Shown: positions 1,282 to 55,384, counted from the first letter of the stretch. The stretch: 64,000 nt of DNA from Schmidtea nova (GCA_044892505.1 CM097882.1:279992001-280056000); one strand, 5' to 3'. Translations and numbers: made by a program. The notes: a model not told the origin generated them from the sequence alone.

Positions 1282-1719
1282 CTCAGCGGGTAAACTGTCA
1301 AGGGGGTAATCGGCTCGTGATTTCTGGAAAGAGGACGTGTGGGCTTCAAAAATGCGAAACCATGAGGAAGGTGTACCGTCTTGATCTAAGAAAAACAGTA
1401 TGGGAGGGGAGCCAGCTGAAGAAATCGGCTCTATAGGAGGTCGGAAACTTCCGTGAATGCGGAAGTTAATGTCTAATATTGAATTAGCTTGGAGTATGGT
1501 GAAAGTCGAGATTAAACAACCGTTGCGTGATAGGTAGAAGGAACTCTTACAATGGATAGCGATGTAGCGATTTCTGAGTATAAGTCAGAGGTGACAACGA
1601 TTTGGCGTATTTTATTGTTGAATCGTATAAGGATATAGGTTGGTGTGATGGAGGCAGTTATGGGGGAAGAATAGTTGTTTTGGTTTGTCTGTTTTTTTGG
1701 ATGATGGTGAGGTTTGCCG

Positions 1720-1847
1720 TTAATTTTATTTTATCATGAATTTATTTATAAAATTATTATTTCATTTACACCTACCTCGTCCATGGACGAGGTAGGTGTA
1801 AATGAAATAATAATTTTATAAATAAATTCATGATAAAATAAAATTAA
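1720..1847. repeat. Perfect 128-bp palindrome (64-bp arms, no loop)
   Basis: Centre is ...CACCTACCTCGTCCA|TGGACGAGGTAGGTG.... The arms match base for base from 1720 to 1847, and both ends read TTAA. Confidence 0.95.
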
Positions 1848-2760
1848 TAAAATTTAATAAAATGGCTGCGATTGTGGAGAAAAAATAATTGTTGTGGGTG
1901 TGACTTGTATGGAATGTGTCGGAAAAAAACTGGGCAGAATATTTGTGGATTTTGAGAAAAATAAAAAAAATAATTTTAAAATTTAAGATGAATAAAAGTA
2001 ATATAAATAAGTATAATATGTTATATAATGTAATAACATAAATAATAGAGATAAAATACCCATCGCCAGATAATCCTAAGTATCTGACGCAATTGTTTTG
2101 AGAGATAGACGCTTCCAGTTGCATTACCGCTCCGTTTTTAGTGTGGTTGTTAGTGGACCCGTAAACCACACAGGAATAGGAGCCGAGGTCGAGTTTATGC
2201 AACGGACAAGAATAACTAGCAGTTTTGAATTGAGGATAAACTTTACGTTGCGTGGTAAATCTTTGACCAGTGACATATTGTTCAGGTGATGAGACGATGT
2301 TGACTGAGTATTCAACTGATTGCCAGTTGTAATTGACACTTTCGTGCTTTCCTGTTTCTACTGATTGACGGAATGTAGTTTCTGAGGCTGGTTGAAATGT
2401 CGAGGCTTCCAATTCCATTGTTGGTCCGGTCTCAGTAGTTCCTTTAACAGCGCATTTATAAGAACCCGAATAATCTCGTCTCAATTGTTCAAAAGTGATG
2501 CTGGTGTTTGTGAATTTCGGAATGACATTACATTGTATAGTAAATTTGTGACCAATAAGATATTGTTTAGGAAATGAGACGAAATTGACTAAGTATTCGG
2601 TATGGTCAGGTCTTCTGACACCAGTTGTAGGGGTTGCAACTTTCATTGCAGATACCTCTAAAACAAAATTAAACAAGAAGAAATATTCAAGATAAAAAAT
2701 ATCTTTTCTGAGTTTTCCAATTTTTTTGCGTTTATAAATTTCTTGCGTTTGGGATTTCAA
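1828..2760 (-). CDS. Putative type I membrane protein with two short Ig-like repeats; start uncertain, possibly a pseudogene
   Basis: Two internal repeats (YLVNFVSFPKQY..F.IQC.V.PKF...LRRDYSGSYKCAV and YSVNIVSSPEQY..F..Q..VYPQF...LHKLDLGSYSCVV) carry D/S-x-GSY-x-C motifs. There is an N-terminal hydrophobic stretch and a C-terminal hydrophobic segment. The track start is TTG; the first ATG is at about 2646. Confidence 0.5.
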   Translation of the reverse strand: MKSQTQEIYKRKKIGKLRKDIFYLEYFFLFNFVLEVSAMKVATPTTGVRRPDHTEYLVNFVSFPKQYLIGHKFTIQCNVIPKFTNTSITFEQLRRDYSGSYKCAVKGTTETGPTMELEASTFQPASETTFRQSVETGKHESVNYNWQSVEYSVNIVSSPEQYVTGQRFTTQRKVYPQFKTASYSCPLHKLDLGSYSCVVYGSTNNHTKNGAVMQLEASISQNNCVRYLGLSGDGYFISIIYVITLYNILYLFILLLFILNFKIIFFIFLKIHKYSAQFFSDTFHTSHTHNNYFFSTIAAILLNFINFILS

Positions 2761-18209: not shown

Positions 18210-20317
18210 TAAGGTGACCAGATTTTAACATTGGTAAAACGGGACACCATTAACCGGTGACGAGGAGGGGAGGGTTGGGGGGAGGTGGTAAATAATTAAA
18301 AATTTGGTCTATTTGGAGCAATAAAAAATTTCATAGAACGCAAAATAGTATTGTAATATATTTTATTTAAATTCAACATAAGTACAATTTACAAATACAT
18401 ATAATAAATGAAAATTATAAAAAAAAATTATATATATAGCAATATTTTATTCTTTGGCATATTTCTCATTTGAGTGAATTTTTTTTAGTAGATTGTTGTC
18501 GTTGTTTAAAATGTCATGAAATTTTTCACAAGAATTTGTTAAATTATATTTCACACATAAAATGGCTTTCAAAGTCTCAACACTTAATTGTGATTTTTCT
18601 GATGTCCACACTTTATTTACCATAGAAATAACGCGTTCAGTCGCAGCATTAAATCCTGGTAAGGACAGCGCGTATTCCACAATTTTTAGTGCATTATTGT
18701 ATGGAATATAGTTTGTTTCAAAATGATGAAATATTTCTAACCATTTGTTCTCTATTGTTATTTTTTCTGATGACCAAGATTGAACCTTTTCCTTATCAAT
18801 ATATTTTTTTAATAATGATACCTCATTAAAAAGATCATTTTCGGAAATATTACTATCTGGGAAATTTTGAGTAATATGATCGAATGATTTTTGCACATCA
18901 TTCCAATTAAGTTCTTGTTTTAATGTAATCCAATGAAAATGTTCAATGTCATTGTAATGTACCGTCCACTCTTCTAAATAATCTATGCAGTTACTATAGA
19001 ACTTTTTGACGTGCTTCATGATATTTGTACGATTTATTGCACCTTGTTCTTCTAGCTGGTTTATACTATTACGGATAATTAACGGAAGAAAATTATTTTC
19101 TAACCGCTCTTGACGCAGAAATTTTAAATTATTAACTTCGTTTGCTACTTCGATTGTCGAAATTTTGTCACCTTCAATAAATTTTATAGCATTTTGAAAA
19201 AGAGCTGCTTGATTATGTACAAACTCTAGCCAAATTTTTGAAGATTCTTTTTCAAAAAAGTCTTCTAAAATTCTAGGACATTTATCCTGTGATAGAAAGT
19301 AGGATTTCAAAGGATCGTATATTTTCAAAATTCTTTCGACAGCTGGCAAAAGAGCTAACCAGCGCGTTTTACTGTATTCAAGTATTTTCTGATATTCGAC
19401 TTCCGCAGTTTCACAAAATTCTTTAGGCATTTCAACGCGCACAGTGTATATATAGAAATAAGAATATATTTTAATAACAATATTTTCCACATCTACGGAC
19501 AACAAGTCAGCAGCTGTTTGAATGGCGTTATGTATTATGTGCGCTGCACAACCAACACCAATAATGTTTTGATTAAGGTTTTTATTTAATTTATAAAATA
19601 TATTATTTATACCTCTTCTCGCTTTTCCTCCAAAATTTGCGTTCGTATTGTCTGCACAATATGCAATCATTTTATGTTTTAAATTGTTTTTTCCAAAATA
19701 TTAATAATGGAATTGAAAATTATTTCAGAAGTTTCGCCGGGCAAAGAAACGAAATCTAAAATTCTAATTTTTATTCCAGTTTCCGAATCAAAAAATCTAA
19801 TTATGGTTGGAAATAACTTTATTTCCTTATGGTTAGATGCGTCAGAATATATCGATATAAAATTAATTTTTTCTAGATTTTTGTTTAATTCTGAAAATGC
19901 ATATGGGAAAAGCACATTACACACAATTGCCTCGGATTTTGTTCTAGCACAGGCAAATTTTTTGTTGAATAACTTTTTGACAACTTGTGTACAGCCCATA
20001 GATCTGAAGGAATGATTGTGATTAATAGCATGAAAAGACATAAGTCCTTCTGCTAATGCTAATTTCTTTTCTTCGTCTCCATAAGTTGTTTTCCGAAAAA
20101 ATTCCTGTATTTTGGAGGAAGATGCAGCAGTATTTAAATATCTTTTATGTTTCTGTGTCTCCAAGTGCTTTGAAATATCATTCTTCCCGCCGTGCGAAAT
20201 AGAAAATTCACCATTACATTTCTCACATTTTACTATGTAATCGCTTTTGATTTTTTTAATAAAAGGAAATTCACTTCTTAACTCATCGTTAAATTTGCAT
20301 CCTCTTTTCTTACTCAT
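18210..20317 (-). mobile_element. hAT transposon (Blackjack-like end) with a transposase split by one frameshift
   Basis: Terminal TAAGGTGACCAGAT...CGGGACA at 18210. The ORF from ATG 20317 has a Zn finger (CEKC...SISHGG..DI.KH) and SDAS (D1). ORF 18447-19670 has CADNT (D2), CAAH, TRWL and ATERVIS (E). The join needs one extra A in the A6 run at about 19687-19692. The other TIR was not found. Confidence 0.85.
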
Positions 20318-21524
20318 TATGTAAAAATCAAAAAAAAATAATTTTAAATTAATAATTAATTTCATAAATACATAAATTTTCACAAACAGTACTCGTATTA
20401 TTTGATTTTATAGTGGCGGCAAAAAAATAATAAAAGTTAGTACTTTATAACAATCAAATTAATTTAATTTATAAACTAAAAATAAAATAATTAGTGTGAC
20501 TATAAGCAAAATTTATAATAGCACAATGATCTTAGGATCCTTGGATAAAAAGTTAATAGTAAAATGACAGTTAGAATTTTTTGTTAAATATTTTTTTCGG
20601 GAGATATCACTAATAAATTGTTTATTTTGAAGAACGAAATAATTATGTGCTTGTCGCTACACCTAAGAATGGAAAACGCATAAACCGAAAAAGTGAAATT
20701 TTCGGAAACTCGGCGATAAAGTAAAATACTTGAAAACGGCTGTGATGGTAATTTTTGTGCAATAAAAATGTTGATCTATTGTCTATGAAAAATGAAAATT
20801 TTTGAAATTGAAATAGATCTAAAGTAAAAAAACAAAAGATTCAAATAAAATTAGTATATCATAGAATATTAAAATGCATAAGAAGATAAAGACTTGGCCA
20901 GATAGAAAACTCAATAATTTAATTATTATTAGCAGAGACAAAGAAATCATATTGTGAAAGTCAAATAATTTCAAGGACAAACTAAAATATAAAATTCCAA
21001 AAAAATAAAGTAGTCAAAACAAGAACAAAAATCAACTTACTTTAGGAAGAAATTGATTGTTTACAAATGAAATATTTTCTACAGCAAATGCTTGTTGTCA
21101 AAAGTAACTATTTAGACGATAACCGAAAATAGAATCAAGCTTGTCACAAATTTTGTAGTTTAAAGTTTATTGGAATGTTAAAGTAAATTGTTAACAATAT
21201 GAATTAATTTAATACCAAATATAATAAGTGATAATAAAACAATAACTAAAAATATCTAACCTCAAAAATAATTTACATATAAACTCTTGAAATTTAGTAA
21301 AGGACGAGTAAATTTAGTTCAAAATCTTATCGATTCAAAATGACAGTGTAATTTAGTTAACGGGAAAATATACACGTTTAAAAATTAACATATGATATTA
21401 TACGACTAGTAAGAAGAATCATTCAATATTCGATTTAAATCAACAAATAATCAGGATAAAATTGTCTTCCAAGGACAGTTAGAGTAAAAACGAAAATCAG
21501 AATTCACAAACGAGACAATTATCA

Positions 21525-30389: not shown

Positions 30390-30446
30390 TGTAAATTTGA
30401 ATTTGGCTTGCTATAGCAAATTGCTATAGTAAGCCAAATTACAAAT
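30390..30446. repeat. 57-nt hairpin element, copy 1
   Basis: TGTAAATTTGAATTTGGCTTGCTATAGCAA-A-TTGCTATAGTAAGCCAAATTACAAAT, identical to 38467-38523. Confidence 0.9.
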
Positions 30447-30852
30447 TAAGGAAATCGATTGTTTTAATGAACAAAAGATAGATCAGAAAATTAGAAAATT
30501 GTGTACAGAAAAAGAAATATAGAAAATTGATCAGAAATTTAAAAAGATAAAGAGAAATTGTCAAGACAAATAAAATATAATGAAAATCCTGGTGGTCATA
30601 TAAACTTTTGATTTATTTCTAGCGTTTTAGAAAAACTTTATTATTATCCCATTTGTATCCTCCAAATTTCAACAAAGAAAAACTTTCAGAACTCATTCTG
30701 AACTCCTCTGCCAAATCAACTAGAAAGAATATATTACAAGTAATTTTTCGTGGTTGTTAGTGTTTGATATAGTACCTTTTATTTACTAAATATAACTTTT
30801 GTATAATAATTTGTTTGTTGTTCGTTCTTTGTTGAATTTTATTTATATATTT

Positions 30853-31723: not shown

Positions 31724-32127
31724 TCGGTTGGGTTTCAGTAAACTTGTAAGGGGGGTACAGGGGACACGGATGTTTCTATGCACGCCCAAGGGCGTGCTAT
31801 ATAGTGAGCCATGGCTCACTAATGAAACATCCGTGCCCCCCCCTGTACCCCCCTTACAAGTTTACTGAAACCCAACCGACCGCATCTACCTTAGGTAGCC
31901 TTTAAATGAAAATATTTACTCAAGTCATTATCCAAATATCTTTATATTAAGTTAAGTAACAGTAGCTTACTCTATATAAAAAGTTATACATTACTCAAGT
32001 AATGAATCAATATATTTTACTTGAGTAATGTAAAACATATATGCTAAGTTAAGTTATAATATCTTACTTTATATAAAAAGTTATACATTACTTAAGTAAT
32101 GAATCAATATTAAATCAATGAATTCAA
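31724..32127 (+). repeat. Left ITR: complete Y-shaped hairpin (31724-31879) plus inner promoter region
   Basis: Stem TCGGTTGGG...CACGGATGTTTC pairs with GAAACATCCGTG...CCCAACCGA. Arms are GCACGCCC-AA-GGGCGTGC (31780-31797) and TAGTGAGCCATGGCTCACTA (31802-31821). The inner part has a duplicated TATATAAAAAG...CATTACTYAAGTAATGAATCAATAT block (about 97-bp period) ending at ATG 32118. Confidence 0.92.
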
Positions 32128-32789
32128 TAGCAATTTATAATGCTCTTGGGATCTTTATGGAAAAATTTGTTACTAATAATCATTTTGAGTTTAACGATGA
32201 TCATGCTAAGCTGGTTGATTCGTTGTGGGCTAAATATAATCCGTTCCCTTTTCCGGAATATAAAAGCTATGAGTATAAGCTTCTGGGAATCGCTACGATT
32301 CTTAATCTACAGGCAGGTAAGACAAAGACTATTATGTTAGAAGGTGTTTCGAATGCAGGCAAGACCACGTTTACGGCCATATGCAGAGGCAAGTTAAAAC
32401 ATGGATTTTTTACTGGAGCTCAGACAGCTAGCGAATTTGTATTTGATGACTGTGTTGACAAGCAACTTATTATTGGAGAGGAGATTTATTGTGATCATCG
32501 TAATGTTAATCTTATCAAACTTTTATGCGAGGGCAATATTTTTCTACATGTATCTCAAAAGAACAAACAAAAGACTGGTCTTCCGAAGGTTCCTGTTGTC
32601 ATTACGAATAATTATCCTATTTGGCAATTTGCTAGTGCTCATAGACAATCATTACTGAATCGTTCGTTGTATATAAAATGTGACACTCCATATTATATGG
32701 GTATCCAAGGTGATGTTTTAGATGATGTTCATAGTATAGACAGTGTTAAATATGATACTTTTAAAAAAATAGATAAATATCTTAAATAA
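32118..32789 (+). CDS. Stand-alone SF3 helicase of the parvovirus NS1 type (no HUH domain)
   Basis: Intact 223-aa ORF with Walker A EGVSNAGKT, FVFDDC, Walker B LIIGEE, motif B' KLLCEG...VSQKNK, motif C PVVITNN and an arginine-finger region LLNR. Confidence 0.88.
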   Translation: MNSIAIYNALGIFMEKFVTNNHFEFNDDHAKLVDSLWAKYNPFPFPEYKSYEYKLLGIATILNLQAGKTKTIMLEGVSNAGKTTFTAICRGKLKHGFFTGAQTASEFVFDDCVDKQLIIGEEIYCDHRNVNLIKLLCEGNIFLHVSQKNKQKTGLPKVPVVITNNYPIWQFASAHRQSLLNRSLYIKCDTPYYMGIQGDVLDDVHSIDSVKYDTFKKIDKYLK

Positions 32790-32822
32790 CTTTATTTTTA
32801 TAACATTTCAATAACAATAACG

Positions 32823-34789
32823 TTAAACCGTAACATGTGTCATTCCACTTGTTCCAAACGCGACCACCTCCGGCCGAAGGAATCTAGCAGCATTGTCTTC
32901 CATCGATGGAAAAAAGTTTTCAGTCTTTGCACTGCCATCGGCTTTGTATTTTTCGCACCATACAAACATCGGGGCATAGTAAGGAATACTAGGTACTACC
33001 CATTTAGTAGTGGGTTGCCAAGGTCTTAAAACTGCCGTATCCCATTGAGTTAGCCGTCTCGTATTTGTAGTGGGAAATGATCCAAATAACTCAATTGTAT
33101 AACTTATCTTCCACTGAAAGGTACAAGTCAAATTTATTTTGTTACGATTAGGTCCCATCATTGTGTTTAATTTAATAAATAGCATAGGCATTGGATTATG
33201 TTCACTGCATTCTTCTAAATTAGCCAAGTGCGTGTAATGATACCACATTTCACTACTTTCATCCCATTTTTTTTCTATGAGTTCGGTATGTCCATCTGTA
33301 AGTTTCTCGTGTATAGTCCTTTTTACTTGTTCGTATTGGAATTGCCTTTTTTATGATCGACAGTTTTATGTACAAATCCAAATATTTGCAATTGACTAGG
33401 ATAAGGACACTTTCTTTTGTCTTTGGTAAATGACATTCTACCAATTGAACCCAGTACTTGTCTAAATGGTTTAATCTTTCGACAACCAAAGAAATCAAAC
33501 CTATACCAGGGAATATCGGCCGTGTCTAATACTGTGTTAATATTTGTATGTTGATCTTGCCATTCTCTGATGTATCTGGGAGCATTTTTTTTTACTTGCA
33601 GTATAATCATAACTATAACTACTGTCAACGTTACAATTTATTATTTCTACTTCGGCACATGTTTCAATGATGTAATTCCATCCTGCTGGATTTAATTTTA
33701 TAGGAGTAAGTAACGCAAGACTTCCATCTAGTTTAAAACCATTATGCTAAGTTGCTTCATCTAACCACATATCTTTGAATGATTTTGCACCATCGGGGGG
33801 TTCACGCAAGGTCAAAATAAATATTTATCGTCCTTGTACACTAAAAACTTCACCTGTTGTTGTAAGCCATTGAAATTATTGGCGCTAGTTTCCCCGATAA
33901 CCTGTATATTAACGATTTCGTAGTGCATATCAATGGGTTTCCACCAAAGGTACCGGTTAATTGCCGACCAAAAGTCCGGATTTGAAGCCATAATATGAGG
34001 ATAAGGGTACTCGAGATTGATATTGTACCACTCATTGATCTCGGTAGTTTGAATGCATGAGGCCCCACAGTTGGTGGTGGTAAAAGATATTCTATTTCCT
34101 TCGAGAGTCGGTCGGTGGTCTCCCTGAGATCCACGTAAAATTCCTCCTCCGCCTCCTGAACTACTTGTTCCTGCACCAGTTGGTGCTGGGGTTGTAGGCG
34201 CTGCTGCCATTTCATTAAGAGCTTGTGTAACTGTATTAATGCCTTTATGTTTCCTGACTTCGTTATTATATACATCTATATGTTCATTGACAACTGACCA
34301 ATGATCGTGGACTACGACATCATCTCTATTTCCATAGGCTTTATATAATTTTTTTTCGTATGCTAGCATGTCAGCCGTGTAAGCCGCACTCCATATACCA
34401 TGTGTCGGAGATTTATCGTGATTATACTGCCTTAAGTAATTTAAAACTCTCCCTCTTTGTACTGTTTGGAAATGATTATTTTTAACTTTATATTCTTCGT
34501 GTTTGATTTTATGTAAGAACTTTTCAAATTTTTCGTGTAAGTGACCGGTAGTATGAAACTCTTTTTTGATAATAGGCTTATCAGTAGGTAAACTTCTTTT
34601 TACCCTATCGGGAACTTCTGGAATTAAATCATCTGTATCCGGATCAGCATAGTCGTGATTTAATTTAAAAACTTTGTTTTCGACTATGCCATCTAGACTT
34701 TCTAATTGTCTCATAGTATTACCGATTGCTTGTTGAATCCTCTGTATAGGACTTAAATCTGGTCTTCTTTGGAAAAAATACGCATACAT
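32823..34789 (-). pseudogene. Parvovirus/densovirus-like capsid gene (about 650 aa reconstructed), three frameshifts and one stop
   Basis: A Gly-rich linker (GAGTSSSGGGGG) precedes a beta-rich region (..RYLWWKPIDMHYEIVNIQV..). The late PMPMLFIKL...TFQWKISYTIEL segment resembles parvovirus VP. The pieces join with single-base changes in homopolymers at about 33815 (T4), 33590 (A9) and 33350 (A6). There is an in-frame TAG at 33747-33749. A minus-strand AATAAA lies at 32791-32796. Confidence 0.72.
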
Positions 34790-34847
34790 CCATTTGTTCC
34801 TTTGTATTAGTTCCGGTAAGAATTTGAACCATTTCCACCACTAATGT

Positions 34848-35762
34848 TTAATAATTTCTTCGTCTGTGTATTTGTTTTTTTTCGAATATTTTAGATATAT
34901 CATTCAAATCGGTCTGGTCCATCCATCTTTTAATTATATCTTTCGCGTACTTCTGATATTTTTGAGAATTATTAATATACCTATCTAGTTCTTTGTGCTC
35001 ATCTAAATACCTAGAATGTAGTGTATACTGGTCTTGTTTATTATATAGAAATAACTCCCGCAAGTCTACTTTTTTATATAGTTCCTCTAGGTGAAAAACA
35101 TCAATTAAATCTTCAGAATTTACATAATCAAAAAAAGCTTTCTCGTCTTTACTATATTCAAACATAAATTCTTTAGTACTGTTATATTTGCCTCCTTTTA
35201 CATTTTGTAAAGCTATCATAATAATAACACTAACAGTCTGCCCTATAACTGCACCTCGACGAGTTGCAAAACGTCCCAATGAATTGAAGGTAGGTTTACC
35301 GTAATTACGTAATGCATAATTCAAGGTTCGACTATTAAATTTCCAATTTAGGCCCATAGTATTAAATACGTCACTTCTGATGGACTTTAAACTGTTACTC
35401 ATTAATAAATCATGATATGGGTTAGACCTTAATTTATTTTCCAGCGAACTAATACTTTTTATAATTGTAGGTTTAATAGTAGTGCTATAAATTTTATACA
35501 TAAATGTTAAAGAATCATAATACCAATTCTGATCAACTTTTTTAATATCCCTACCACCACTTAAGAACTTAACAATAGACGTTGAATATTCTAAATTTTG
35601 AACATAATTCTTCATGGCCCTTCGTTCCTCTGGTGTAAGAGTATGACTATTTATTAAACCTAATTTACTTTCTATGACATTCTTTAACTCAAAAACAAAT
35701 ATAATTAAATTACCAATTACTTCTTCTTCTGTGGTTTTCCCTCTAAGATATCTAATATTCAT
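34848..35762 (-). CDS. Orphan 304-aa viral ORF upstream of the capsid gene
   Basis: Uninterrupted ATG-to-stop ORF inside the ITR-bounded element, with a basic C-terminus (KKQIHRRRNY). No motif recognised. Confidence 0.7.
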   Translation of the reverse strand: MNIRYLRGKTTEEEVIGNLIIFVFELKNVIESKLGLINSHTLTPEERRAMKNYVQNLEYSTSIVKFLSGGRDIKKVDQNWYYDSLTFMYKIYSTTIKPTIIKSISSLENKLRSNPYHDLLMSNSLKSIRSDVFNTMGLNWKFNSRTLNYALRNYGKPTFNSLGRFATRRGAVIGQTVSVIIMIALQNVKGGKYNSTKEFMFEYSKDEKAFFDYVNSEDLIDVFHLEELYKKVDLRELFLYNKQDQYTLHSRYLDEHKELDRYINNSQKYQKYAKDIIKRWMDQTDLNDISKIFEKKQIHRRRNY

Positions 35763-35780
35763 TATAAGGTCTTTGTCACT

Positions 35781-36344
35781 ATGGAACCTTTTGGTCCGAT
35801 CAGAAGTTTGACCATATATTATGTCTTGTTAAAGGCACTGTTCATCAATTTGATTGATAGGTATCGAAAATTTTTTAGGTTTATTATTTTTATCCAGTCT
35901 GATATCTGTACTAGTTCCAGGACCACAAAAGAGGGACAAGATCGGTGCACAGTGTGCATAGTATTCCGCAACGCACTTCGCACTCTACGATCGATGAAGT
36001 CAGAGAGAACCTTGACAAGTATAGGGAAATGGAAGCTTGTCAATTGGTGGCAAAGATTAATAATGACTCTGCTGCCGCAATGGGAAATATGTCAAACAAT
36101 ACGAACGATAATATTTTCCGAAAACGTTTCTACCTATGGTCCTTTAATATCGGCGTCTCCTTTTTTAAGCAACACGAAGAAATACTTCGAGGATTATGGA
36201 GTGATCCTAAGATCACAAAGTTCTTTACAGGACAGGAGGAGATTGGGGATAATGGTTTCCGACATCTGCAATGTATGCTGGAGACTGTCAGAAATTATAC
36301 AATCTCGGCTGTCCGAGCCCAGTTCAAAATACCTTTGTCAGTAG
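35781..36344 (+). CDS. Possible overlapping accessory ORF (187 aa) in an alternative frame over the Rep 5' end
   Basis: ATG-initiated and long for AT-rich DNA. Starts 18 bp from the divergent ORF at 35762. No recognised motif. Confidence 0.35.
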   Translation: MEPFGPIRSLTIYYVLLKALFINLIDRYRKFFRFIIFIQSDICTSSRTTKEGQDRCTVCIVFRNALRTLRSMKSERTLTSIGKWKLVNWWQRLIMTLLPQWEICQTIRTIIFSENVSTYGPLISASPFLSNTKKYFEDYGVILRSQSSLQDRRRLGIMVSDICNVCWRLSEIIQSRLSEPSSKYLCQ

Positions 36345-37204
36345 CATCCGGCTACTGAGCGAGCAGCAGTCTTCCAATATGCGACAAAATCAGAGACCCG
36401 ACAGCCAAATGGACTTTCAATCTTATATGGTGAACAGAGTAAGAAATTTTCTGAAAATAATTTTAAATCAGCTCTTAACTGTACATCTTATTCTGAGGCA
36501 ATACAAATTATTAAAGACAAAGAGCCTTTTCATTATATTACAAAACGGAAAGTAATAATAGAAAGTTTATTGAATGAATAGGGCAGGCCTACAATGCCTA
36601 ATTTTAATAATTTTACTATCAATCCAGTTAATATTTACGACATGCCTAGTCATGTATTTCTTGGTCCGACTGGCATTGGAAAGACAAACTTCGCATTGAG
36701 CCATTTCACATGCCCAGTTCATGCAAAACATATGCAATTACTAGGCAGAATCAGTTCAGATACAACGAAAACAGATAGCATCGTTTTTGATGATCTTTAT
36801 TTCAATAAATTTAGCTCCTCAGAATTTTTAAGCTTAGTAGATTTAGCTTTTGACAATTGCATTAATATCAAATACTCAGTAGCTATAATACCAAAATGCA
36901 TGTCTCGAATATTTTGCATCAATACATTTGATAATTTTTTCCCTGACAATATATCTCCAGAAATACAAAAAGCTATTAATAGTCGCATTGTAATTCACCA
37001 TTTTACTGAAAAGCTATATAGTGAATATATAAATGAAAATGAAGTATTTTTTATATTACTACTTAATAACCTTGTTTTTAGGTGATAGAAAATCCATACC
37101 GGAATACGAACCAGCTGTTCAGGAGTTTTCTAGAGGAAGCGGAAACAGGAGCTTCTCCAGTGTTACCTGTAGATATTGCGGACGAGCTGTTCGAATCTTC
37201 ATAG
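36029..37204 (+). pseudogene. rep: CRESS-DNA/circovirus-like Rep (HUH endonuclease plus SF3 helicase), interrupted
   Basis: Motif I FYLWSFN and motif II GQEEIGDNGFRHLQCML. After a +1 shift at about 36350, motif III VFQYATKSETR. In-frame TAG at 36579-36581, then Walker A FLGPTGIGKT, Walker B IVFDD, IKY..AIIP..RIFCIN and AINSR. A possible 38-nt intron (37044-37081) adds an acidic tail ending at TAG 37202-37204. Confidence 0.85.
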
Positions 37205-37288
37205 GAGTCTGTGACACTACATTTTAATTTGAACAGTTAACATTGTGATTTGTTTCGTATTAACTTAGTTCTCAATTAAACATTGTTG

Positions 37289-37539
37289 TTGAATTCATTT
37301 ATTTAATATTGATTCATTACTTGAGTAATGTATAACTTTTTATACAGAGTAAGCTACTGTTACTTAACTTAATATAAAGATATTTGGATAATGACTTGAG
37401 TAAATATTTTCATTTAAAGGCTACCTAAGCTAGCTGCGGTCGGTTGGGTTTCAGTAAACTTGTAAGGGGGGTACAGGGGGGGGCACGGATGTTTCTATGC
37501 ACGCCCATGGGCTATATAGTGCTATATAGTGAGCCATGG
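37289..37539 (-). repeat. Right ITR, truncated and rearranged within the hairpin
   Basis: Reverse complement of the left inner region and stem (few mismatches), then GCACGCCCATGGGC-TATATAGTGC-TATATAGTGAGCCATGG, broken at 37539. Confidence 0.92.
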
Positions 37540-37800
37540 TTGCAATTACAAAATAATAAAACAAAACAATTATTATCAATTCAATTATTAGCACAATAAA
37601 CGCTTTAACAGTACAACTATACCAGATTACTTTAGCTTTTATCTACAGAAATCTTCGGAGGAACTGAGTTTCTACAGTCCTCTAACTCAATTTCAATGTC
37701 TGTACAGTGTTTGCTTCAAAGGTTAAAAATAATAATATCGGATTCAGAAATTGGATCCTTTCGAGGTATGTGTAAGGCCAATAAACGAATACAAGGTTGA

Positions 37801-37990
37801 TAATAATAATATCGGATTCTGAAATTTTATTCGTATTCTGAAATCTGATTCGGATTCCGAATTTGGATTCTCTCGATATATTTGTAGAGGTGATAAATGA
37901 ATACCAAATTAATGATAATAATATCGGATTCTGAAATTTTATTCGTATTCTGAAATCTGATTCGGATTCCGAATTTGGATTCTTTCGATA
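37801..37990. repeat. Tandem duplication of about 115 bp
   Basis: ATAATATCGGATTCTGAAATTTTATTCGTATTCTGAAATCTGATTCGGATTCCGAATTTGGATTC occurs twice. Confidence 0.85.
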
Positions 37991-38090
37991 TATTTTTAGG
38001 TCCAGTAAACGTATAAAAGTTAATTATAATACTTATAACCGAATTATTTTCAGGTAATTAATTTTTAAATTCTAAATCAATTTTTTTAAT

Positions 38091-38119
38091 GCTTACTATA
38101 GTTTATTACTATAGTAAGC
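38091..38119. repeat. Short hairpin sharing the GCTTRCTATAG/CTATAGTAAGC core
   Basis: GCTTACTATAG-tttatta-CTATAGTAAGC. Confidence 0.8.
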
Positions 38120-38466: not shown

Positions 38467-38523
38467 TGTAAATTTGAATTTGGCTTGCTATAGCAAATTG
38501 CTATAGTAAGCCAAATTACAAAT
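38467..38523. repeat. 57-nt hairpin element, copy 2
   Basis: Identical to 30390-30446. About 60 bp downstream of a C11 tract (38395-38405). Confidence 0.9.
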
Positions 38524-39120
38524 AAAAAAGTTATTGATCGAATTTATGAAATTTGATTGTTAAGAAAATATTTATACCCAAAAGAAAATCAACTAAATTG
38601 GATTCAGAATACAGAGAAATTAAAAGAAAATAACTGAAGAGAAGATTACTGTAACTGAATCTAATTAGAAAGTGATATTATCTTAACAGACGTTAATTAA
38701 AAAGGAAGATTATTGCAACTGAATTTAATTAAAAAGAATACGATCCAGATTAGAAAACTCGAATTTAATTATAAAGAAAACGATCCAGAATAAAACTCGA
38801 ATTTAATTATAAAGAAAACAATTTTTAACCCTTCTAACAATCTAACACGTGAGTACGTGTTTATAAAGTTTTTTTGAAGTTATTATTGTTTCTTAATAAT
38901 AAAAGTTTTTATTACTGTTGTCGGTTCATTTGTTGTTAGCATTCACAAATAAGCACGCACCAGACACACAAGAATATAAACATACACCCCGAGTGTCTCC
39001 ACACAGTTTTCGGAAGACTCTCTCGAGCTCTATAACTTCTCCCACACAACATCATTCTATCACACAATACACATCCATCCTCGACATCAAATTAAACAGA
39101 AAACCATTACAAAAGTAAAC

Positions 39121-39123
<3 letters not shown>

Positions 39124-39193
<70 letters not shown>
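39124..39193. repeat. (TA)n microsatellite
   Basis: Direct reading. Confidence 0.97.
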
Positions 39194-45518: not shown

Positions 45519-48500
45519 TTAGTGCCAATTCCTCCAAGCGCAATACATTCTCGCCGTCCAATTTAGTACTTTCAGAGATATGAGCATGGCATCTGACTGC
45601 GTGACACCGAATTTCTGTACGGTGTCCCATGAATCCTCGGCCCAGATACCCTGCCAGTTCAGCGTTAACGCACCGAACTCTACCGTATCTGCCCCCTGCT
45701 CAAGGACCCAGTCACGTATCTCAATCTCATCATATACCTTGGACTTTGATATATTTCGTTCTCTCAGATCTGACTTGTCACTAACAATTTGTACATCCAC
45801 GACCATAGCACGGCGGTCCTTGATAATTACTAAATCCGGTTTCCGTATAGTCTCTTTATACGGTATAACCGGTTCCACAAGGGTCTTCCACCCCTTCTTC
45901 TTCGCGATGTCAGCTGTAAAAAGCATCACTTTATTGTGTCGTTCCACTCGCATCCCATGCGAAGCAGTGCACTTTTGTGATATGTGGCTAAGACTGCAGG
46001 GTAACCCACAGCCCGCCTTACATATAGATGATGAAGTGGCGGAGCCGCCATTCATACGACTAAGTCGCGTCGGGGTACTAAAAAGGTTTCCACGAACTTT
46101 GACACTGTTAACGAAGGATCTACCTGTCATCAACTTAGTCCGGGCCTTAAGCCAGTTATGAACAAAAGGCACCTCGTCGCTTCCACACAGACCCTTCCCA
46201 TCTAGCTTTGTATACAACAAGTCTCGCATCGACTCGTAATAGGTATGTTTTTCGTACGCCAGGGAGTCACCAGTTTTAATATGCTTACTCCATTTGGCTA
46301 ACAAGTTTCTGACGACATCCTGCTCCACTAATCCGCGAATCCTTCCATCACTGCTATCGGCAAGCCTCTTCAATCTAGTTATCTTCGCAAACTTCACCTC
46401 AGCTTAGAGAGTAGGTACCCCCATTCCTCCATCTTTAACTTTGGAGTGAATGTATGAAAAGCACGTATCTTTGGGTAGATGTAGCCATTTACGAACAAGC
46501 ATCCGGGTTATCTTGTCCAGTTCATAAAGCTCCAAGTCATCAGTTTCGCCTAAAATTGCTTCGTGCAAAATGCCCGGTATAAGGAAGTTAGTTAAGACTT
46601 CCAGTTTTTGTTGTGGTTTAATAGGGGAGATAGTAATATTGTTAATGCGTTCTGTATATATTTTAGTTAAGTTATTTTTCATTTTACCCAGCGGACCAAA
46701 ATAAATGCCTAAATATTTATAAAAATCATTTGATAACAAAATGGGAAATTCCTCTTCACCATCGGCCACTCGCTCCGGAGTTATTATCCAACTGTCACTC
46801 TTCCCGTCTCTTTTGGCTACAATGGACGCCCACTTTGCAGCATTCACTGAAAGACCATTTTCACCAAGTTCTCGAAGAACAGAAGAAAGAATGTCTTGGA
46901 GTCCTTCTTTGGTCTCAGCTAGCAGGATTATATCATCAGCGTAGGCCATAATGGGATAGGTATTTCCATTCATCTTGTATCCGAGTTGGGTTTTGTAGGC
47001 TTTCTCAATCGCCAACTCAATAATATTATTAAAAAGTGCGGGTGAAAGCGGGTCCCCTTGCTTTACACCTCTTTTGAACGTAGCTGGCGTTCCATCTACA
47101 ATAGTCTCGGCGTCAGTATAGCTATTTTCTATATAATTTAATAGTAGTTTGGGGTAATGGGCTATTTTTGCCGCTCTTAAAATACTTTCATGATTGACAG
47201 AGTCAAAAGCTTTCTTCATATCAATGAAAGCCAGGGCAATATTCTTTTTATTTTTACGTGCATCAGAGAGGATAGAGTCTAGTAAAATAGTATTCTCTAA
47301 ACATCCATCGATGGGCTTAAACCCTTTTTGGGCTGAAAAACTTTTATCATAGTTTAGGGTTCGCTGAGCGAGAATTTTATTTAAAACTCTAGTTATAACT
47401 GAATTTATTGAAATAAGCCGATAATCACTTGGACTTTTTTGATTTTCGGTCTTTGGTATTAGCGTTGTTCTGGAGCTCTTTAGAACCGGAGGAAGATAAC
47501 CTAGATAAATAACCAAATTAAATAACTTTACCAATACAGACGTCGGGATCGTCCTTAGTGTTGCAGTAGTAATGCCATCAGGACCACAGGCAGTCTTCAG
47601 GTCTATTTCCTTAACTGAATTCAGAACCTCTGAATCGGTTATAGGTAAGACCATATTACTCTCCTCAGTTACAGTCTCTACAGCTCTTGTATCAGCATCT
47701 GATTCCCTTTCGAAAACCCCACGCCAATACTCACCCAGACCCGTAACTGGTTCGATACCACTCACCAAAGAATCGACCTTCCCCCCGAGTATCACTTTGG
47801 CTGCCTCACTTCTGTCTTTTTTGAATAGTTCTTGGAGAGCTCCATATGTTTTTCTTCGGAACTCTTTCTTCAGATGCTTCTTCGCATCCTTGGACGGCTT
47901 GACTAGTGGGCTAACCTTACTACGGGGTGGCTTTCCTTTGGGACGATGGCTAAAGGTTATATCATTACAATATATCTCTAGACATCTTCTTTTTTCATCA
48001 GACGCAGAAGGACCGTGGATAATATAGTCAAGGTCGCGCTCTTGACAATCATCAATACCTTCCTTCTTTGGTAGTGCGGAGAGGTATTTAATGATTGCTT
48101 CTTTGTCCGATTCATCGTGGGCGAACTGAACCTGCTGCTTGTTTTGCGATATGCAAATATTGTCGTCAGGGTTTTCCCTTAACACTTGTAATATTTTGCA
48201 ATACCTAACCGTTTTCAAGTGTGCTCTAATGGACTCCTTGGAGCGATCAGCACTAACGGTCCCTAATTTGTACATCAAAACTCCCCTATTACACTCGAGT
48301 CTCTCACATGCCATATGCACCTTAGCCATGCGGACCTTCTCCTCAACAGTCCAAATTGCGTTACGCGAGTTGATTTTATTTTTATTTATTTTATTTATCT
48401 TAGCGGCATCGTGTTTATCACGATGTTTATTACTGGTGTGTACCTCCTTCCCAATTTTAGTCGGAAAAATCGCTTCACAAAAATCACAAGCGAAAGTGTC

Positions 48501-48545
48501 GGCGGCTTCCTCTCCCTTCGTTATTGATTTTTTATTAGGTTTCAT
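45519..48545 (-). mobile_element. R2-clade non-LTR retrotransposon ORF (about 1008 aa) with one in-frame stop
   Basis: One C2H2 finger (CDFC...H....H) and a Myb domain (RNAIWTVEEK). RT motifs include QKGF...GC, AFIDMKKAFDSV, GVKQGDPLSP and YADD. TAA at 46404-46406 stays in frame with the C-terminal CxxC..HxxxxC, RHN, KPDL, VVDV and K..Y restriction-like endonuclease. Confidence 0.92.
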
Positions 48546-51537: not shown

Positions 51538-52006
51538 TTAGTCCGTGCCAGTTCTAAGTTGACCGTTTAGTGTACAACGACGATCATCAATCCGAAGACC
51601 AACAACCAAAGCAAAATTTGCCCATCAACCAGTTAAAAAAGTACCATCTCAACACCATTTCAAGTTGCCTCAAAACAGCATCAAAACAGCTCAATTCTAT
51701 ACCAACTGACTTCTTAACTAAGCCCATCATACCCGGTCCTTAGAGCCAATCCTTTTACCGAAGGTACGGATCTAANNNNNNNNNNNNNNNNNNNNNNNNN
51801 NNNNNNNNNNNNNNNNNNNNNNNNNNNNNNNNNNNNNNNNNNNNNNNNNNNNNNNNNNNNNNNNNNNNNNNNNNNNNNNNNNNNNNNNNNNNNNNNNNNN
51901 NNNNNNNNNNNNNNNNNNNNNNNNNNNNNNNNNNNNNNNNNNNNNNNTTATATCCGAATTATTGTTATTCAATTGATCACAATGAGATGTGTCATAAATC
52001 AATGAA
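51538..52006 (-). rRNA. 28S rDNA fragment (D7a-D8 region), pseudogenic, copy 1; contains a 172-nt N run
   Basis: The reverse complement reads TTAGATCCGTACCTTCGGTAAAAGGATTGGCTCTAAGG...AACTTAGAACTGGCACGGAC, matching conserved LSU rRNA sequence on each side of D8. Confidence 0.82.
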
Positions 52007-54914
52007 CCAATATTATGGTCATAATTATTATAATATTAGGTATTTTATATGCCCTGTATGCATAACCTCCCAACCCATTCCCTATCATTCTTTTTATGAT
52101 CAACATAAGAATCACTTAGGACAATATACATCAACTAAAAAACAAAAATTATTTAAACGACCTAATCTAAATGACATAAATTCTATTCTAAATAAAAAGA
52201 TTAAATTAAACCCTTGTACAATTGAAAAAATATATTTATCTACAAATGAACCAAATAATTCTGATGATGAATTGATGAAAGTATTGGAAGAAGCAATAGA
52301 GGAAAAGCAATTATTGGAAGCGGTCGAAGAGATTGAAGCGATGGAAGCGGTGGAAGCGGTAGAAGCGGTGGAAGAGGTGGAAGCGGTGGAAGAGGTGGAA
52401 GAGGTGGAAGCGGGCGAAAACAAAATTTTAATTGAAGCGGTGGAAGAGATTGAAGATTTTTGGAACGTAGGATTTTATCAAACTGGAGGAAGTGTTATAG
52501 AACCTCTCCCAGTCATTGAAAGCGATTTAAATGGATCGCATAGGATTTTAAAAATTAATACTAGTGATTTAAATATAAATCAAATTATTTTTCCTCAATC
52601 GTTAATTAATAAATTAATTGAAATAATTAACGAAATAGGCTATGTGAAGATACAATTTGGTATCTGTGTTGAGTTTGAAAAAGATGGAGAAATTAAAAGA
52701 AACAATATTTCCAATAGTGCAAAACCTCTGACACAGACATTTTTCGAAGAGGGAATTAAAAAATTAAATGAAAAGATTTCATCAATTACAGAATTAGGAA
52801 GTAGTTGGATTTTAAAAAGAATAACTGAAATTAGTTTTATTGTAACAAAAATTTCAAATATAAGCAGATTAGCTGGTAGAAGCTATATAAGAACACCTAA
52901 AGAATTAGCTAGAAAAAATTGTATAGTCAATGTACACAATAAAGACAATTTATGCTTTATTTACAGCATTTTGGTAATACTAAAATATGAAACATTAAAT
53001 AATCATAGAGAAAGAGTTTCGAACTATACTGAGTTTTTGACGGGCTTCGATTATGAAATATCTGAAATGCCAATGAAATTAAATAATATTAGGAAATTTG
53101 AATCAAAGAATCCCGGATTAATTATTAACGTATTGACGTATAATCCATCAACCTCATTAAATGATAATTATATTTTAAAACATCCACATTTGGATATTAT
53201 TCACAGATCAAAAATGAAAAACGGCAAAATTATAAATTTATTATTATTAAATGAAGGTGGGAAATATCACTATGCAGCCATAACAAATCTAAAGAGATTA
53301 ATGAACTGTAATCAATACTCCGATAATAATTTTAGAATAAGAAGCGACTGGTGCAGTAGATGTTTGAATGGTTTCCCAAATAAATTATCATTGGAAAAAC
53401 ATGAAAATCTTTGTAGAAAAAATCAACTAGGAACTACATTATATACTGTCCCAGAAAATAAAATGTTAAAATTTACAGATTGGTCAAAAACTGTTACCCC
53501 ACCATTTGTAATTTATGCAGATTTTGAATCCATTTTACCAAAGGATGATGTATATTATCAGAAACACTTACCTATTTCTGCGGGGCTTTTGTTAATAAAT
53601 AATTTTGATGGGTCAAAATCTTATCAACAATTTATTGGATTAAATTGTGTAGAAGATTTTTTAATAGCGGTTGAAGAAATAGCTTTATTTAAAGTTCTTC
53701 CATATTACAATAAAAATGGTAATACTAAAATGAATAGATTGACTGAAATTGAAGAGGATCAATTTAAAAATGAAACCACTTGTTACCTTTGTATGAAAAA
53801 TATCGTAGATCCTGTAAGAGACCACGACCATTTCACTGGGAAATATTTAGGTGCGGCATGTCAAACATGTAATATTAATAGAAAAATAAACAAAACTTTA
53901 CCAATAGTTTTTCATAATTTGAAAGGATACGATTTGCACCTTATTCTTAAATATGGAATAAATAAATTTAAAAATTGGTCATTGAGTTGTATACCAATTA
54001 CATCTGAAAAATTTATATCGCTTATAGTTCATGTTGACAAAATTAGTTTAAGATTTATTGATTCTTACCAGTTTGTGAATGATTCTTTGGCCAAGGCAGT
54101 AAAAACTTTGAATTCTTTACCATTGACAAATTCAGTTTTTGATGGAACTATAGTTTCTGAAAAGGGTATATTTCCACATAGCTTTGCAACAAGCTTAGAA
54201 GTTCTTGAAAACACTTATGAATTGCCACCTATTTGGGAAGGTGTTACAGACGATGAGTATCTTAAGGCTCAACTTATTTGGACTGAAACAAAATGTGTTA
54301 ATCTTTTAGATTATATGTCGATTTACTTAAAACTTGACTGCTTTCTTTTGGCAGATTTCTTTCAACAATTTCGTTTGAAATCTTTAGCTCATAATAAATT
54401 AGAACCATTAAATTACTTCGGTATTCCTGGAATGTCTTGGTCGTCTTCTTTAATGTCTTTAGATGAACCAATAGAATTAATTACTGAAAATGAAATGTTT
54501 AGCTTTTATGAGGGTGGAATTCGAGGAGGGTTGACTTTTGTAAATAAACATTTTGTAAAAACTGATGAAAACACCGATTTATTATATATTGATATTAATA
54601 ATCTTTACGGATGGGCGTTGAGCCAAGCTTTACCGTGTGGTGAATTTAGTTGGGTGTCAGATAATTTAGATAAAATTTTACTTGATTGTGTTAATCTTGA
54701 TCTTGAATCTTTGTCTTATGGTTACACTTTAGAGGTAGATTTGGAAATACCAACTGAAATCCACGACACTTTAGATGATTTCCCAGTTGCAGCTGAGAAA
54801 ATGAAACCTAGAGGATCTAAAGTAGAAAAATTATTACTGACACATTACCCTAAAAAGAACTATGTAATTCATTGGCGTTTATTAAAATTATTGATTAAAT
54901 TTATTGATTATTAA
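51987..54914 (+). pseudogene. Protein-primed family B DNA polymerase (Polinton-type), 3'-truncated
   Basis: Exo I YADFES, DHDHFTGKYLGAAC..CN, Exo II FHNLKGYD, RFIDS, Exo III YLKLDC..LAD, GGIRGG and pol motif A YIDINNLYGWALSQALP. Ends at HWRLL, before motifs B (KxxxNxxxGK) and C (DTDS). The first 7 codons come from the rDNA copy. Confidence 0.92.
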
Positions 54915-54916
54915 AA

Positions 54917-55384
54917 TTCATTGATTTATGACACATCTCATTGTGATCAATTGAATAACAATAATTCGGATATAANNNNNNNNNNNNNNNNNNNNNNNNN
55001 NNNNNNNNNNNNNNNNNNNNNNNNNNNNNNNNNNNNNNNNNNNNNNNNNNNNNNNNNNNNNNNNNNNNNNNNNNNNNNNNNNNNNNNNNNNNNNNNNNNN
55101 NNNNNNNNNNNNNNNNNNNNNNNNNNNNNNNNNNNNNNNNNNNNNNNTTAGATCCGTACCTTCGGTAAAAGGATTGGCTCTAAGGACCGGGTATGATGGG
55201 CTTAGTTAAGAAGTCAGTTGGTATAGAATTGAGCTGTTTTGATGCTGTTTTGAGGCAACTTGAAATGGTGTTGAGATGGTACTTTTTAACTGGTTGATGG
55301 GCGAATTTTGCTTTGGTTGTTGGTCTTCGGATTGATGATCGTCGTTGTACACTAAACGGTCAACTTAGAACTGGCACGGACTAA
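54917..55384 (+). rRNA. 28S rDNA fragment, copy 2, inverted relative to copy 1; contains a 172-nt N run
   Basis: Differs from copy 1 by one substitution and one homopolymer indel over about 297 readable bases. Confidence 0.82.

What the first reader, a model, noticed from the sequence alone, without database searches (positions are those of the whole stretch)
31724..37539. Full-length endogenous chimeric ssDNA virus: parvovirus-like hairpins and capsid, CRESS-type Rep and a second independent helicase
Seen: one ITR-to-ITR unit of about 5.8 kb, ordered NS1-type helicase (+), capsid-like gene (-), orphan ORF (-) and HUH+SF3 Rep (+). Established: parvoviruses encode a single NS1 with HUH and SF3 fused, and CRESS viruses are circular with a circovirus-like Rep. 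From memory, the planarian element PEVE (Girardia tigrina, Rebrikov et al. 2002) has inverted repeats plus a circovirus-like Rep and an E1-like helicase. Parvo-like hybrid virus pairs a CRESS-like Rep with a parvovirus-like capsid but, as I recall, has one helicase. Inference: this is a PEVE-like lineage that can be read here as an encapsidated linear ssDNA virus replicating by rolling hairpin, and it may represent an unclassified virus family.
Basis: partly seen in the sequence, partly recalled or inferred. Interest (0 to 1): 0.95.

Follow-up and report, generated by a model that had tools for sequence, protein, structure and literature searches.

The report
Integrated defective PEVE-like ssDNA virus copy
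This is a real but partly broken genomic copy of a small DNA virus of the poorly studied planarian "PEVE/PIVE" kind, which combines parvovirus-style hairpin ends, capsid and helicase with a separate circovirus-style replication protein; the kind was already described, so it is an interesting example, not a discovery.

Summary
Window 31724-37539 is one unit bounded by about 290-nt inverted terminal repeats, 98% identical over 190 nt. The left end folds into a 156-nt T-shaped hairpin (dG -77 kcal/mol, z -21). ORF1 (+) is a helicase-only protein of the Parvo_NS1 family (Pfam 2.4e-12). The minus-strand gene is a parvovirus-type capsid gene. It is homologous to ORF1L of the planarian element PEVE, and a family profile hits solved parvovirus capsids (best E 3e-4). 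ORF3 (-) is an intact orphan. The plus-strand Rep shows only sub-threshold circovirus/geminivirus Rep signals plus SF3-like Walker motifs.

"Full-length" is overstated. The right hairpin lacks its outer arm. The capsid gene needs at least four frame changes or stops to read through, and Rep needs at least two. The cross-arms of the two ends lie in opposite (flip/flop) order, which is a trace of hairpin-transfer replication.

The kind is already on record: PEVE (Girardia tigrina, 2002) and the integrated PIVE of Schmidtea mediterranea (Repbase 2008; PMC3198968). Both structure predictions failed, so the capsid fold is untested. Synteny with relatives was not checked, because fetching their DNA is barred.

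Verdict: a defective endogenous member of a known, unclassified lineage. Interest is moderate.

The parts
31724..32013 (.). Left inverted terminal repeat. Its outer 156 nt (31724-31879) form a T-shaped terminal hairpin: a long stem plus two short palindromic cross-arms. The inner part carries a TATA-like box and a 14-nt near-palindrome.
   Evidence: I1, I4; dG -77.1, z -21.
32040..32141 (.). Partial tandem duplicate (period 97 nt) of the inner ITR part. It holds a second TATA-like box and a second near-palindrome and lies directly upstream of, and slightly overlapping, the ORF1 start.
   Evidence: (D2, I2).
32118..32789 (+). ORF1, 223 aa, intact. It is an SF3 helicase of the Parvo_NS1 family with no nuclease (HUH) domain. 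The ITR ends just upstream of it, so there is no room for such a domain.
   Evidence: Pfam Parvo_NS1 2.4e-12, residues 57-169 against profile positions 99-211 of 271. AAV Rep40/Rep68 helicase chains at 8e-6, and another parvovirus NS1; 0 breaks.
32823..34789 (-). Capsid (VP) gene of parvovirus type, broken. It has a roughly 200-aa N-terminal extension, a glycine-rich linker and then the VP core. Both the N-terminal conserved core region and the C-terminal end are recognisable and colinear with a 428-aa relative.
   Evidence: P0002 at 1.5e-7 and P0003 at 8.4e-7. P0005 is PEVE ORF1L; alignment A1; the A1 profile hits 14 parvovirus capsid chains, best 3.1e-4; the window ORF alone gives faint hits to the same capsids in the same region; the last piece matches residues 324-422 of P0003 at 3e-5; at least 4 frame changes or in-frame stops.
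34848..35762 (-). ORF3, 304 aa, intact, with no recognisable relative. It lies in tandem upstream of the VP gene on the same strand.
   Evidence: no hits; 0 breaks.
35763..36079 (.). Central region between the divergently oriented ORF3/VP genes and Rep. It is the presumed bidirectional promoter region (inference).
   Evidence: A weak stem-loop here carries a near match to the CRESS nonanucleotide, but this is not above chance.
36080..37085 (+). Rep gene, broken. It is CRESS-like: an N-terminal HUH-type region (motifs I and II read by eye), a central region resembling the geminivirus Rep central domain, and a C-terminal P-loop region with Walker A, Walker B and motif C in SF3 spacing. The start could instead be an in-frame ATG 17 codons upstream.
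   Evidence: frames. Viral_Rep E 0.1 and Gemini_AL1_M E 5.5e-4, both below Pfam's cut-offs; no PDB hit; at least 2 events.
37306..37539 (.). Right inverted terminal repeat. The inner part is 98% complementary to the left one. The terminal hairpin is incomplete, with the outer arm missing, and its cross-arms are in the opposite order to an exact inverted copy of the left end (flip versus flop).
   Evidence: (I1, D8, D9, D11).

Best explanation
The region is a chromosomally integrated, defective copy of a small linear ssDNA virus of the planarian PEVE/PIVE lineage.

Shown:
- The unit has parvovirus-style inverted terminal repeats ending in a T-shaped hairpin.
- It carries a parvovirus-type capsid gene homologous to PEVE ORF1L.
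- It carries a helicase-only protein of the NS1 family.
- It carries a second, separate replication gene whose weak signals all point to CRESS-type Reps.

Inferred mechanism of the parent virus:
- The CRESS-like Rep supplied the HUH nicking and joining activity at the hairpin ends. Replication ran by hairpin transfer (rolling hairpin). This left the two ends of this copy in opposite flip/flop configurations.
- The NS1-type helicase-only ORF1 lacks any nuclease domain. It most likely acted as an accessory motor, for strand displacement or for loading ssDNA into preformed capsids, as the helicase-only small Rep proteins of dependoparvoviruses do (that role is from my own knowledge of AAV Rep52/40).
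- ORF1 would be transcribed from a TATA-like promoter inside the left ITR. ORF3 plus VP, and Rep, would be transcribed from the central divergent region.

This copy lost the outer arm of one hairpin, probably at integration. Its capsid and Rep genes no longer read through. It is therefore a genomic fossil, or at best a carrier of two still-open genes (ORF1 and ORF3).
For: - ITRs and hairpin.
- Flip/flop: the cross-arm segment is a direct repeat between the two ends, not an inverted one (D9, D11).
- ORF1: Parvo_NS1 helicase only.
- VP: homology to P0002, P0003 and PEVE ORF1L. The family profile hits aveparvovirus, bocavirus and AAV capsid chains, all in the same region (PDB identities checked). 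The C-terminal piece is colinear with P0003.
- Rep: three colinear weak signals plus motifs.
- Integration: host-type repeats, transposase and reverse-transcriptase remnants lie on both sides in the same window. GC is 0.346 in the element against 0.298 in the flanks.
- Defects counted.
- Literature: PIVE and PEVE.
Against: - Rep's HUH and SF3 identity is below every curated threshold and has no PDB hit.
- The capsid fold is unconfirmed: pLDDT was 30.6 for the VP relative and 34.0 for the Rep helicase piece.
- No second copy or relative was compared at the DNA level, so the unity of the two halves rests on the single ITR pair.
- The ITR arms are 98% identical while two genes are badly broken. 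This is an odd combination. It could mean that a defective genome was integrated, or that some frame changes are indel errors of the assembly.
- The frame change inside Rep could also be a splice junction, as in some CRESS Reps. This was not tested.
- The host species is not identified.
Confidence: 0.8

Rival explanations
1. It is a virus-derived transposable element, not a viral fossil. On this reading, a hairpin-ended element multiplies inside the genome using its own Rep and helicase, and the capsid gene is a decaying leftover.
For: PMC3198968 treats PIVE and similar elements as 'ssDNA virus-like transposons' and reports numerous NS1-like sequences in the Schmidtea genome. In this copy the capsid gene is the most damaged gene, while ORF1 and ORF3 are intact.
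Against: No target-site duplication is seen at the ends. Only one copy is in 64 kb. Rep, which intragenomic spread would need, is itself broken. One end is truncated the way integrated hairpin genomes are.
Confidence: 0.12
2. It is a chimera produced by chance or misassembly: two unrelated elements lie side by side, a parvovirus-like helicase/capsid unit and a CRESS-like Rep unit.
For: No relative was compared for synteny. The two helicases share no detectable similarity. The literature speaks of a PEVE 'small segment' carrying the NS1-like gene. From my own memory, PEVE's two unique regions are separated by repeats.
Against: A single pair of 98%-identical ITRs encloses all four genes. Apart from a 97-nt tandem duplicate next to the left ITR, there is no internal repeat remnant. 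Gene packing is tight and the orientation is orderly. PEVE is reported to carry both helicase types as well (from memory of Rebrikov 2002, which is not held).
Confidence: 0.05
3. It is an episomal virus genome wrongly joined to host sequence by the assembler, and is not integrated.
For: PEVE was described as extrachromosomal. The ITR arms are nearly identical.
Against: One hairpin is truncated and runs straight into AT-rich, repeat-rich host-like sequence. Two genes are broken. Both flanks continue for more than 25 kb in the window.
Confidence: 0.03

Closest known systems
[quoted passage not shown] 2002; NCBI taxid 159252, unclassified viruses)
   Same: The capsid-like protein is in the same family as PEVE ORF1L. 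The record holding ORF1L is 5,699 nt, close to the 5,816 nt here. By the literature, and from memory, PEVE also has inverted repeats, a circovirus-like Rep and a second NS1/E1-like helicase.
   Different: The relationship is distant: about 30% identity in the best-conserved VP stretch, whereas the unnamed relatives are about 50% identical to PEVE. PEVE is reported as extrachromosomal, whereas this copy is integrated and defective. The VP here has an N-terminal extension of about 200 aa that the relatives' predicted proteins lack.
PIVE (planarian integrated virus-like element, Schmidtea mediterranea; Repbase 2008, discussed in PMC3198968)
   Same: It is an integrated, ITR-bearing planarian element whose first protein (PIVE_1p) is a Parvo_NS1-like helicase grouping with the PEVE small segment. 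The AT-rich, repeat-rich window is compatible with such a genome.
   Different: I could not test whether this element is PIVE itself or a relative. Repbase is not available here, and the source organism of the window is unknown.
Parvoviridae (for example dependoparvoviruses)
   Same: It shares ITRs ending in a T-shaped hairpin with flip/flop, an SF3 helicase of the Parvo_NS1 family, a VP with a glycine-rich linker, and the conserved VP core region matched by the profile.
   Different: The NS1-type protein has no HUH nuclease domain. The nuclease sits on a separate CRESS-like Rep that has its own helicase. No PLA2 or Parvo_coat Pfam match was found. There is an extra orphan ORF.
CRESS-DNA viruses (Circoviridae, Geminiviridae and others)
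   Same: The Rep layout is HUH region, then a central domain, then a P-loop, with weak Viral_Rep and Gemini_AL1_M signals. Rep and capsid genes diverge from a central intergenic region.
   Different: The unit is linear and hairpin-ended, not circular. There is no significant ori stem-loop with the nonanucleotide. The capsid is of parvovirus type.
Bidnaviridae and parvo-like hybrid viruses (PHV/NIH-CQV)
   Same: These are other ssDNA genomes that mix a parvovirus-type capsid with replication genes of another origin (PMC4419787, PMC13141889; their architectures are from my own knowledge).
   Different: No PolB gene is present, and the unit is a single segment. PHV sequences never came back as hits, and they are now regarded as reagent-borne sequences of unknown host. 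No comparison was made.

Membership tests
PEVE/PIVE lineage of planarian virus-like elements | Capsid-like protein homologous to PEVE ORF1L | tested here: met
   The window ORF matches P0003 and P0002 (E 1e-7 to 1e-6 against 1.8 billion proteins). P0003 matches PEVE ORF1L at 4.8e-63.
PEVE/PIVE lineage of planarian virus-like elements | Two separate helicase-bearing genes: an NS1/E1-like SF3 helicase and a circovirus-like Rep | tested here: inconclusive
   The NS1-like helicase is clear. Rep has only sub-threshold signals. No direct comparison with PEVE's own two proteins was made.
PEVE/PIVE lineage of planarian virus-like elements | Inverted repeats at the ends | tested here: met
PEVE/PIVE lineage of planarian virus-like elements | Planarian host | not testable with these tools
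   The source of the window is not given. The exact look-ups found nothing.
Parvoviridae | Terminal hairpins on a linear genome, with flip/flop | tested here: met
   This is DNA-level evidence only; single-strandedness of a virion genome cannot be tested here.
Parvoviridae | A single NS1/Rep with an N-terminal HUH nuclease fused to the SF3 helicase | tested here: not met
   ORF1 aligns only to helicase positions 99-211 of the Parvo_NS1 profile and starts next to the ITR. The HUH-like motifs lie in a different gene.
Parvoviridae | VP with the parvovirus jelly-roll core | tested here: inconclusive
   The sequence profile hits 14 parvovirus capsid chains in one conserved region, best E 3.1e-4. 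The structure model was too poor for a fold comparison.
Parvoviridae | PLA2 domain in the VP1 N-terminal extension (many genera, not all) | tested here: not met
   No Parvo_coat_N or PLA2 match at E up to 1.
CRESS-DNA viruses (Cressdnaviricota) | Rep with HUH motifs I-III followed by an SF3 helicase | tested here: inconclusive
   Viral_Rep E 0.1, Gemini_AL1_M E 5.5e-4, and Walker A/B/C read by eye. No PDB hits. The model failed.
CRESS-DNA viruses (Cressdnaviricota) | Circular genome with an ori stem-loop carrying the nonanucleotide | tested here: not met
   The unit is ITR-bounded. The 8-of-9 match upstream of Rep sits in a stem-loop no better than shuffles (z -0.6), and such matches occur about 7 times per kb.
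Bidnaviridae | Protein-primed family B DNA polymerase gene; two segments | tested here: not met
   No such ORF or Pfam match is in the unit.

The most novel reading that the evidence does not exclude
The PEVE/PIVE lineage, of which this is a readable endogenous copy, is a family-level group of linear ssDNA viruses. In it, a parvovirus-type capsid, T-shaped hairpin telomeres and an NS1-type helicase work together with a separate CRESS-type Rep that supplies the nuclease. This would be a living intermediate, or a recombinant, between CRESS-DNA viruses and parvoviruses. It would bear on how parvovirus NS1 and rolling-hairpin replication arose. The capsid assignment and the hairpin anatomy may not have been described for this lineage before.
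Probability: 0.35. Interest if true: 0.8.

Novelty: new member of a known kind. Interest (0 to 1): 0.5.

Why it matters
PEVE has sat among the 'unclassified viruses' since 2002 and is almost absent from the literature I could search. Only PMC3198968 discusses it together with its integrated relative PIVE.

This copy allows several statements from the sequence alone:
- The lineage has AAV-like T-shaped hairpins with flip/flop.
- It has a capsid protein related to parvovirus VPs.
- Its NS1-type helicase has no nuclease domain.
- The nuclease sits in a second, CRESS-like Rep gene.

If these points hold across relatives, the lineage is a natural test case for two questions. One is the proposed descent of parvoviruses from CRESS-like ancestors. 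The other is how modular ssDNA virus replication genes are. If this is simply a copy of PIVE, it adds anatomy to a known repeat family and nothing more.

Tried and rejected
- Word-indexed protein searches with the VP ORF and with the Rep helicase piece found nothing. The length filter may hide full-length relatives.
- P0001, the top hit of the exhaustive search, is a repeat protein matched five times by one short stretch. I rejected it as spurious.
- The AlphaFold model of the 428-aa relative P0003 with the 5-row alignment had pLDDT 30.6. The model of the Rep helicase piece alone had pLDDT 34.0. Both are unusable, so fold search was not run, because matches to such models are meaningless.
- A CRESS-type ori was sought. 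The pattern was taken from PMC6186406. An 8-of-9 match sits in a loop upstream of Rep, but the stem-loop is no better than shuffles and such matches are common. I rejected it as evidence.
- PHROGs, NCBIfam, Rfam and PDB searches of Rep pieces and ORF3 gave nothing usable.
- No target-site duplication was found.
- Identifying the host through exact protein look-ups failed.
- The PEVE papers of 2002 are not held.
- The supplements of PMC3198968 do not mention PIVE.


Full report
**Observation**

The repeat finder shows a 190-nt inverted repeat (31824-32013 against 37306-37495, 98% complementary). It also shows a 40-nt perfect palindromic stem at the left tip (31724-31763 against 31840-31879).

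Read directly and folded as DNA, the left 156 nt form a long stem capped by two short palindromic cross-arms. This is a T-shaped three-way hairpin with dG -77.1 kcal/mol and z -21, and none of 200 shuffles folded as well.

The right end keeps the inner stem strand and part of the cross-arms but lacks the outer arm, and it does not fold.

The cross-arm segment is a direct repeat between the two ends (D9, D11). In an exact inverted copy it would be an inverted repeat. The two ends are therefore in opposite 'flip' and 'flop' configurations. Hairpin-transfer replication produces exactly this arrangement.

A 14-nt near-palindrome occurs three times in the window, always in the inner ITR parts, against 0.01 expected. 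A TATA-like box sits beside it. On the left side this inner part is tandemly duplicated with a 97-nt period, right up to the ORF1 start (D2, I2).

Only one copy of the unit is in the window. The element holds four stop-free runs of at least 200 codons, against none in 500 shuffles. Its GC is 0.346 against 0.298 in the flanks.

**Genes**

ORF1 (32118-32789, +, 223 aa, intact)
- It matches Pfam Parvo_NS1 at 2.4e-12, but only at the helicase positions 99-211 of 271.
- It matches the solved helicase domains of AAV Rep40/Rep68 and another parvovirus NS1, at 8e-6 to 3e-4.
- It begins next to the ITR, so there is no room for a nuclease domain. It is a helicase-only protein.

Capsid (VP) gene (32823-34789, minus strand)
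- Roughly its first half is one open frame. That half contains an N-terminal extension of about 200 aa, a glycine-rich linker, and then a conserved stretch.
- The exhaustive search of 1.84 billion representatives gave two real relatives: P0002 at 1.5e-7 and P0003 at 8.4e-7. The top hit, P0001, is a repeat-protein artefact.
- Searching with P0003 returned P0005. [quoted passage not shown] PEVE is an unclassified virus.
- A profile of the five-sequence alignment A1 was searched against all PDB chains. It returned 17 hits, and 14 of them are 60-subunit capsid chains labelled VP2, VP3 or capsid protein. All 14 align at the same profile region (about positions 20-100) and the same chain region (about 50-150). 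The best E-values are 3.1e-4, 6.3e-4 and 3.3e-3.
- The entries I could check in papers are aveparvovirus, bocavirus and AAV capsids (PMC12282197, PMC6521121, PMC7828300).
- The window ORF alone gives faint hits to the same capsids in the same place.
- The last minus-strand piece of the gene matches the C-terminal residues 324-422 of P0003 at 3e-5. The gene is therefore present end to end.
- The gene is broken. At least four frame changes or in-frame stops are needed to read it through.

ORF3 (34848-35762, -, 304 aa)
- It is intact and has no detectable relative in Pfam, PDB, PHROGs or NCBIfam.

Rep gene (about 36080-37085, +)
- It lies in more than one frame. At least two events are needed to read it through: one frame change and one in-frame stop.
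- Searched piece by piece, the N-terminal piece has Viral_Rep as its best Pfam match, at E 0.1. The middle piece matches the geminivirus Rep central domain at E 5.5e-4 and 20.4 bits, below the cut-off of 24. The C-terminal piece shows only a P-loop.
- By eye, the pieces carry in order: a motif-I-like and an HLQ-type motif II, a Y-x-x-K-type motif III, then Walker A (GPTGIGKT), Walker B and an asparagine-bearing motif C at SF3 spacing.
- These signals are colinear and all point the same way, but none passes a curated threshold. There is no PDB hit.
- The two helicases of the unit share no detectable similarity.

**What it is and how it most likely worked**

The best reading, at 0.8, is an integrated, defective copy of a PEVE/PIVE-type linear ssDNA virus.

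Shown:
- The hairpin-ended ITR unit.
- The NS1-type helicase without a nuclease domain.
- The capsid gene's family tie to PEVE ORF1L and to parvovirus VPs.
- The defects.
- The host-like flanks, which hold a hAT transposase remnant, a reverse transcriptase and tandem repeats.

Inferred:
- The CRESS-like Rep provided the nicking at the hairpins.
- Replication ran by rolling hairpin, with flip/flop as its trace.
- ORF1 served as an accessory or packaging motor, as the small helicase-only Rep proteins do in dependoparvoviruses (my own knowledge).
- Transcription ran from an ITR promoter for ORF1, and from the central divergent region for ORF3 plus VP and for Rep.

Rivals:
- A virus-derived transposon (0.12).
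- A chance or misassembled chimera (0.05).
- An episome wrongly joined to host DNA (0.03).

One oddity remains. The ITR arms are 98% identical although two genes are badly broken. Either a defective genome was integrated, or some frame changes are assembly indels, or one of them is a splice junction. Reads and RNA-seq would settle this.

**Comparison with what is known**

PMC3198968 states that Repbase has held PIVE, an integrated virus-like element of Schmidtea mediterranea, since 2008. It also states that PIVE_1p and the 'PEVE small segment' group with parvovirus NS1, and that PEVE itself had not been found integrated. The kind is therefore known.

The element fails the Parvoviridae criterion of a fused HUH-SF3 NS1. 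It fails the CRESS criterion of a circular genome with a nonanucleotide ori. It also lacks the bidnavirus polymerase. It works like a parvovirus at its ends and in its shell, and like a CRESS virus in its initiator, but it is a member of neither group.

I could not find three things described in the searchable literature: the parvovirus-type capsid assignment of ORF1L, the T-shaped hairpin, and the flip/flop. The 2002 papers are not held, so I cannot claim these as new.

- Synteny with relatives is therefore untested.
- Fold search was not used, because both models were too poor.
- The N runs in the window were left as they are.

2. I recalled the CRESS nonanucleotide consensus before reading it. 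The pattern used is the one printed in PMC6186406.
3. To end queries at ORF ends, I worked out piece bounds in my reasoning. Those bounds are not repeated here.

**Verdict**

This is a real feature and a known kind. It is a defective new member, or possibly PIVE itself. Interest is 0.5.

Noticed in passing
window 30390-30449 and 38467-38526 (also 38091-38119): A 60-nt, internally palindromic sequence occurs twice at 98% identity, about 1.3 kb left and 0.9 kb right of the element, with a third weaker copy. It looks like a small MITE-like repeat family of the host. It is not part of the virus unit.
   Followed up: no
window 37738-38031 and 38641-38819: Tandem arrays with periods of 112, 19, 32 and 38 nt lie just right of the element, and a (TA)35 run lies at 39124-39193. 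The element sits in satellite-like, AT-rich DNA.
   Followed up: no
window 18447-20383 (-): Two adjacent ORFs of 407 and 234 aa. The first carries a hAT-family dimerisation domain (Pfam 1e-5), so this is probably a hAT transposase remnant.
   Followed up: partly
window 45519-48545 (-): A 713-aa ORF with a reverse-transcriptase domain (RVT_1, 5.9e-34), followed by a 292-aa ORF. This is a retroelement in a locally GC-richer stretch (0.41).
   Followed up: partly
window 51987-54914 (+): A 975-aa ORF with only a weak Endonuclease_7-like match (3.4e-4). It is bracketed by two equal-sized N runs (51776-51947 and 54976-55147).
   Followed up: no
window 1-2000: GC is 0.435 with a strong GC skew (+0.43). 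This is unlike the rest of the window and unexplained.
   Followed up: no
window 35781-36344 (+): A 187-aa open frame with no hits overlaps the N-terminal part of Rep in another frame. It is in the same frame as the two downstream Rep pieces. This could be chance, an overlapping gene, or a hint that the Rep transcript is spliced.
   Followed up: partly
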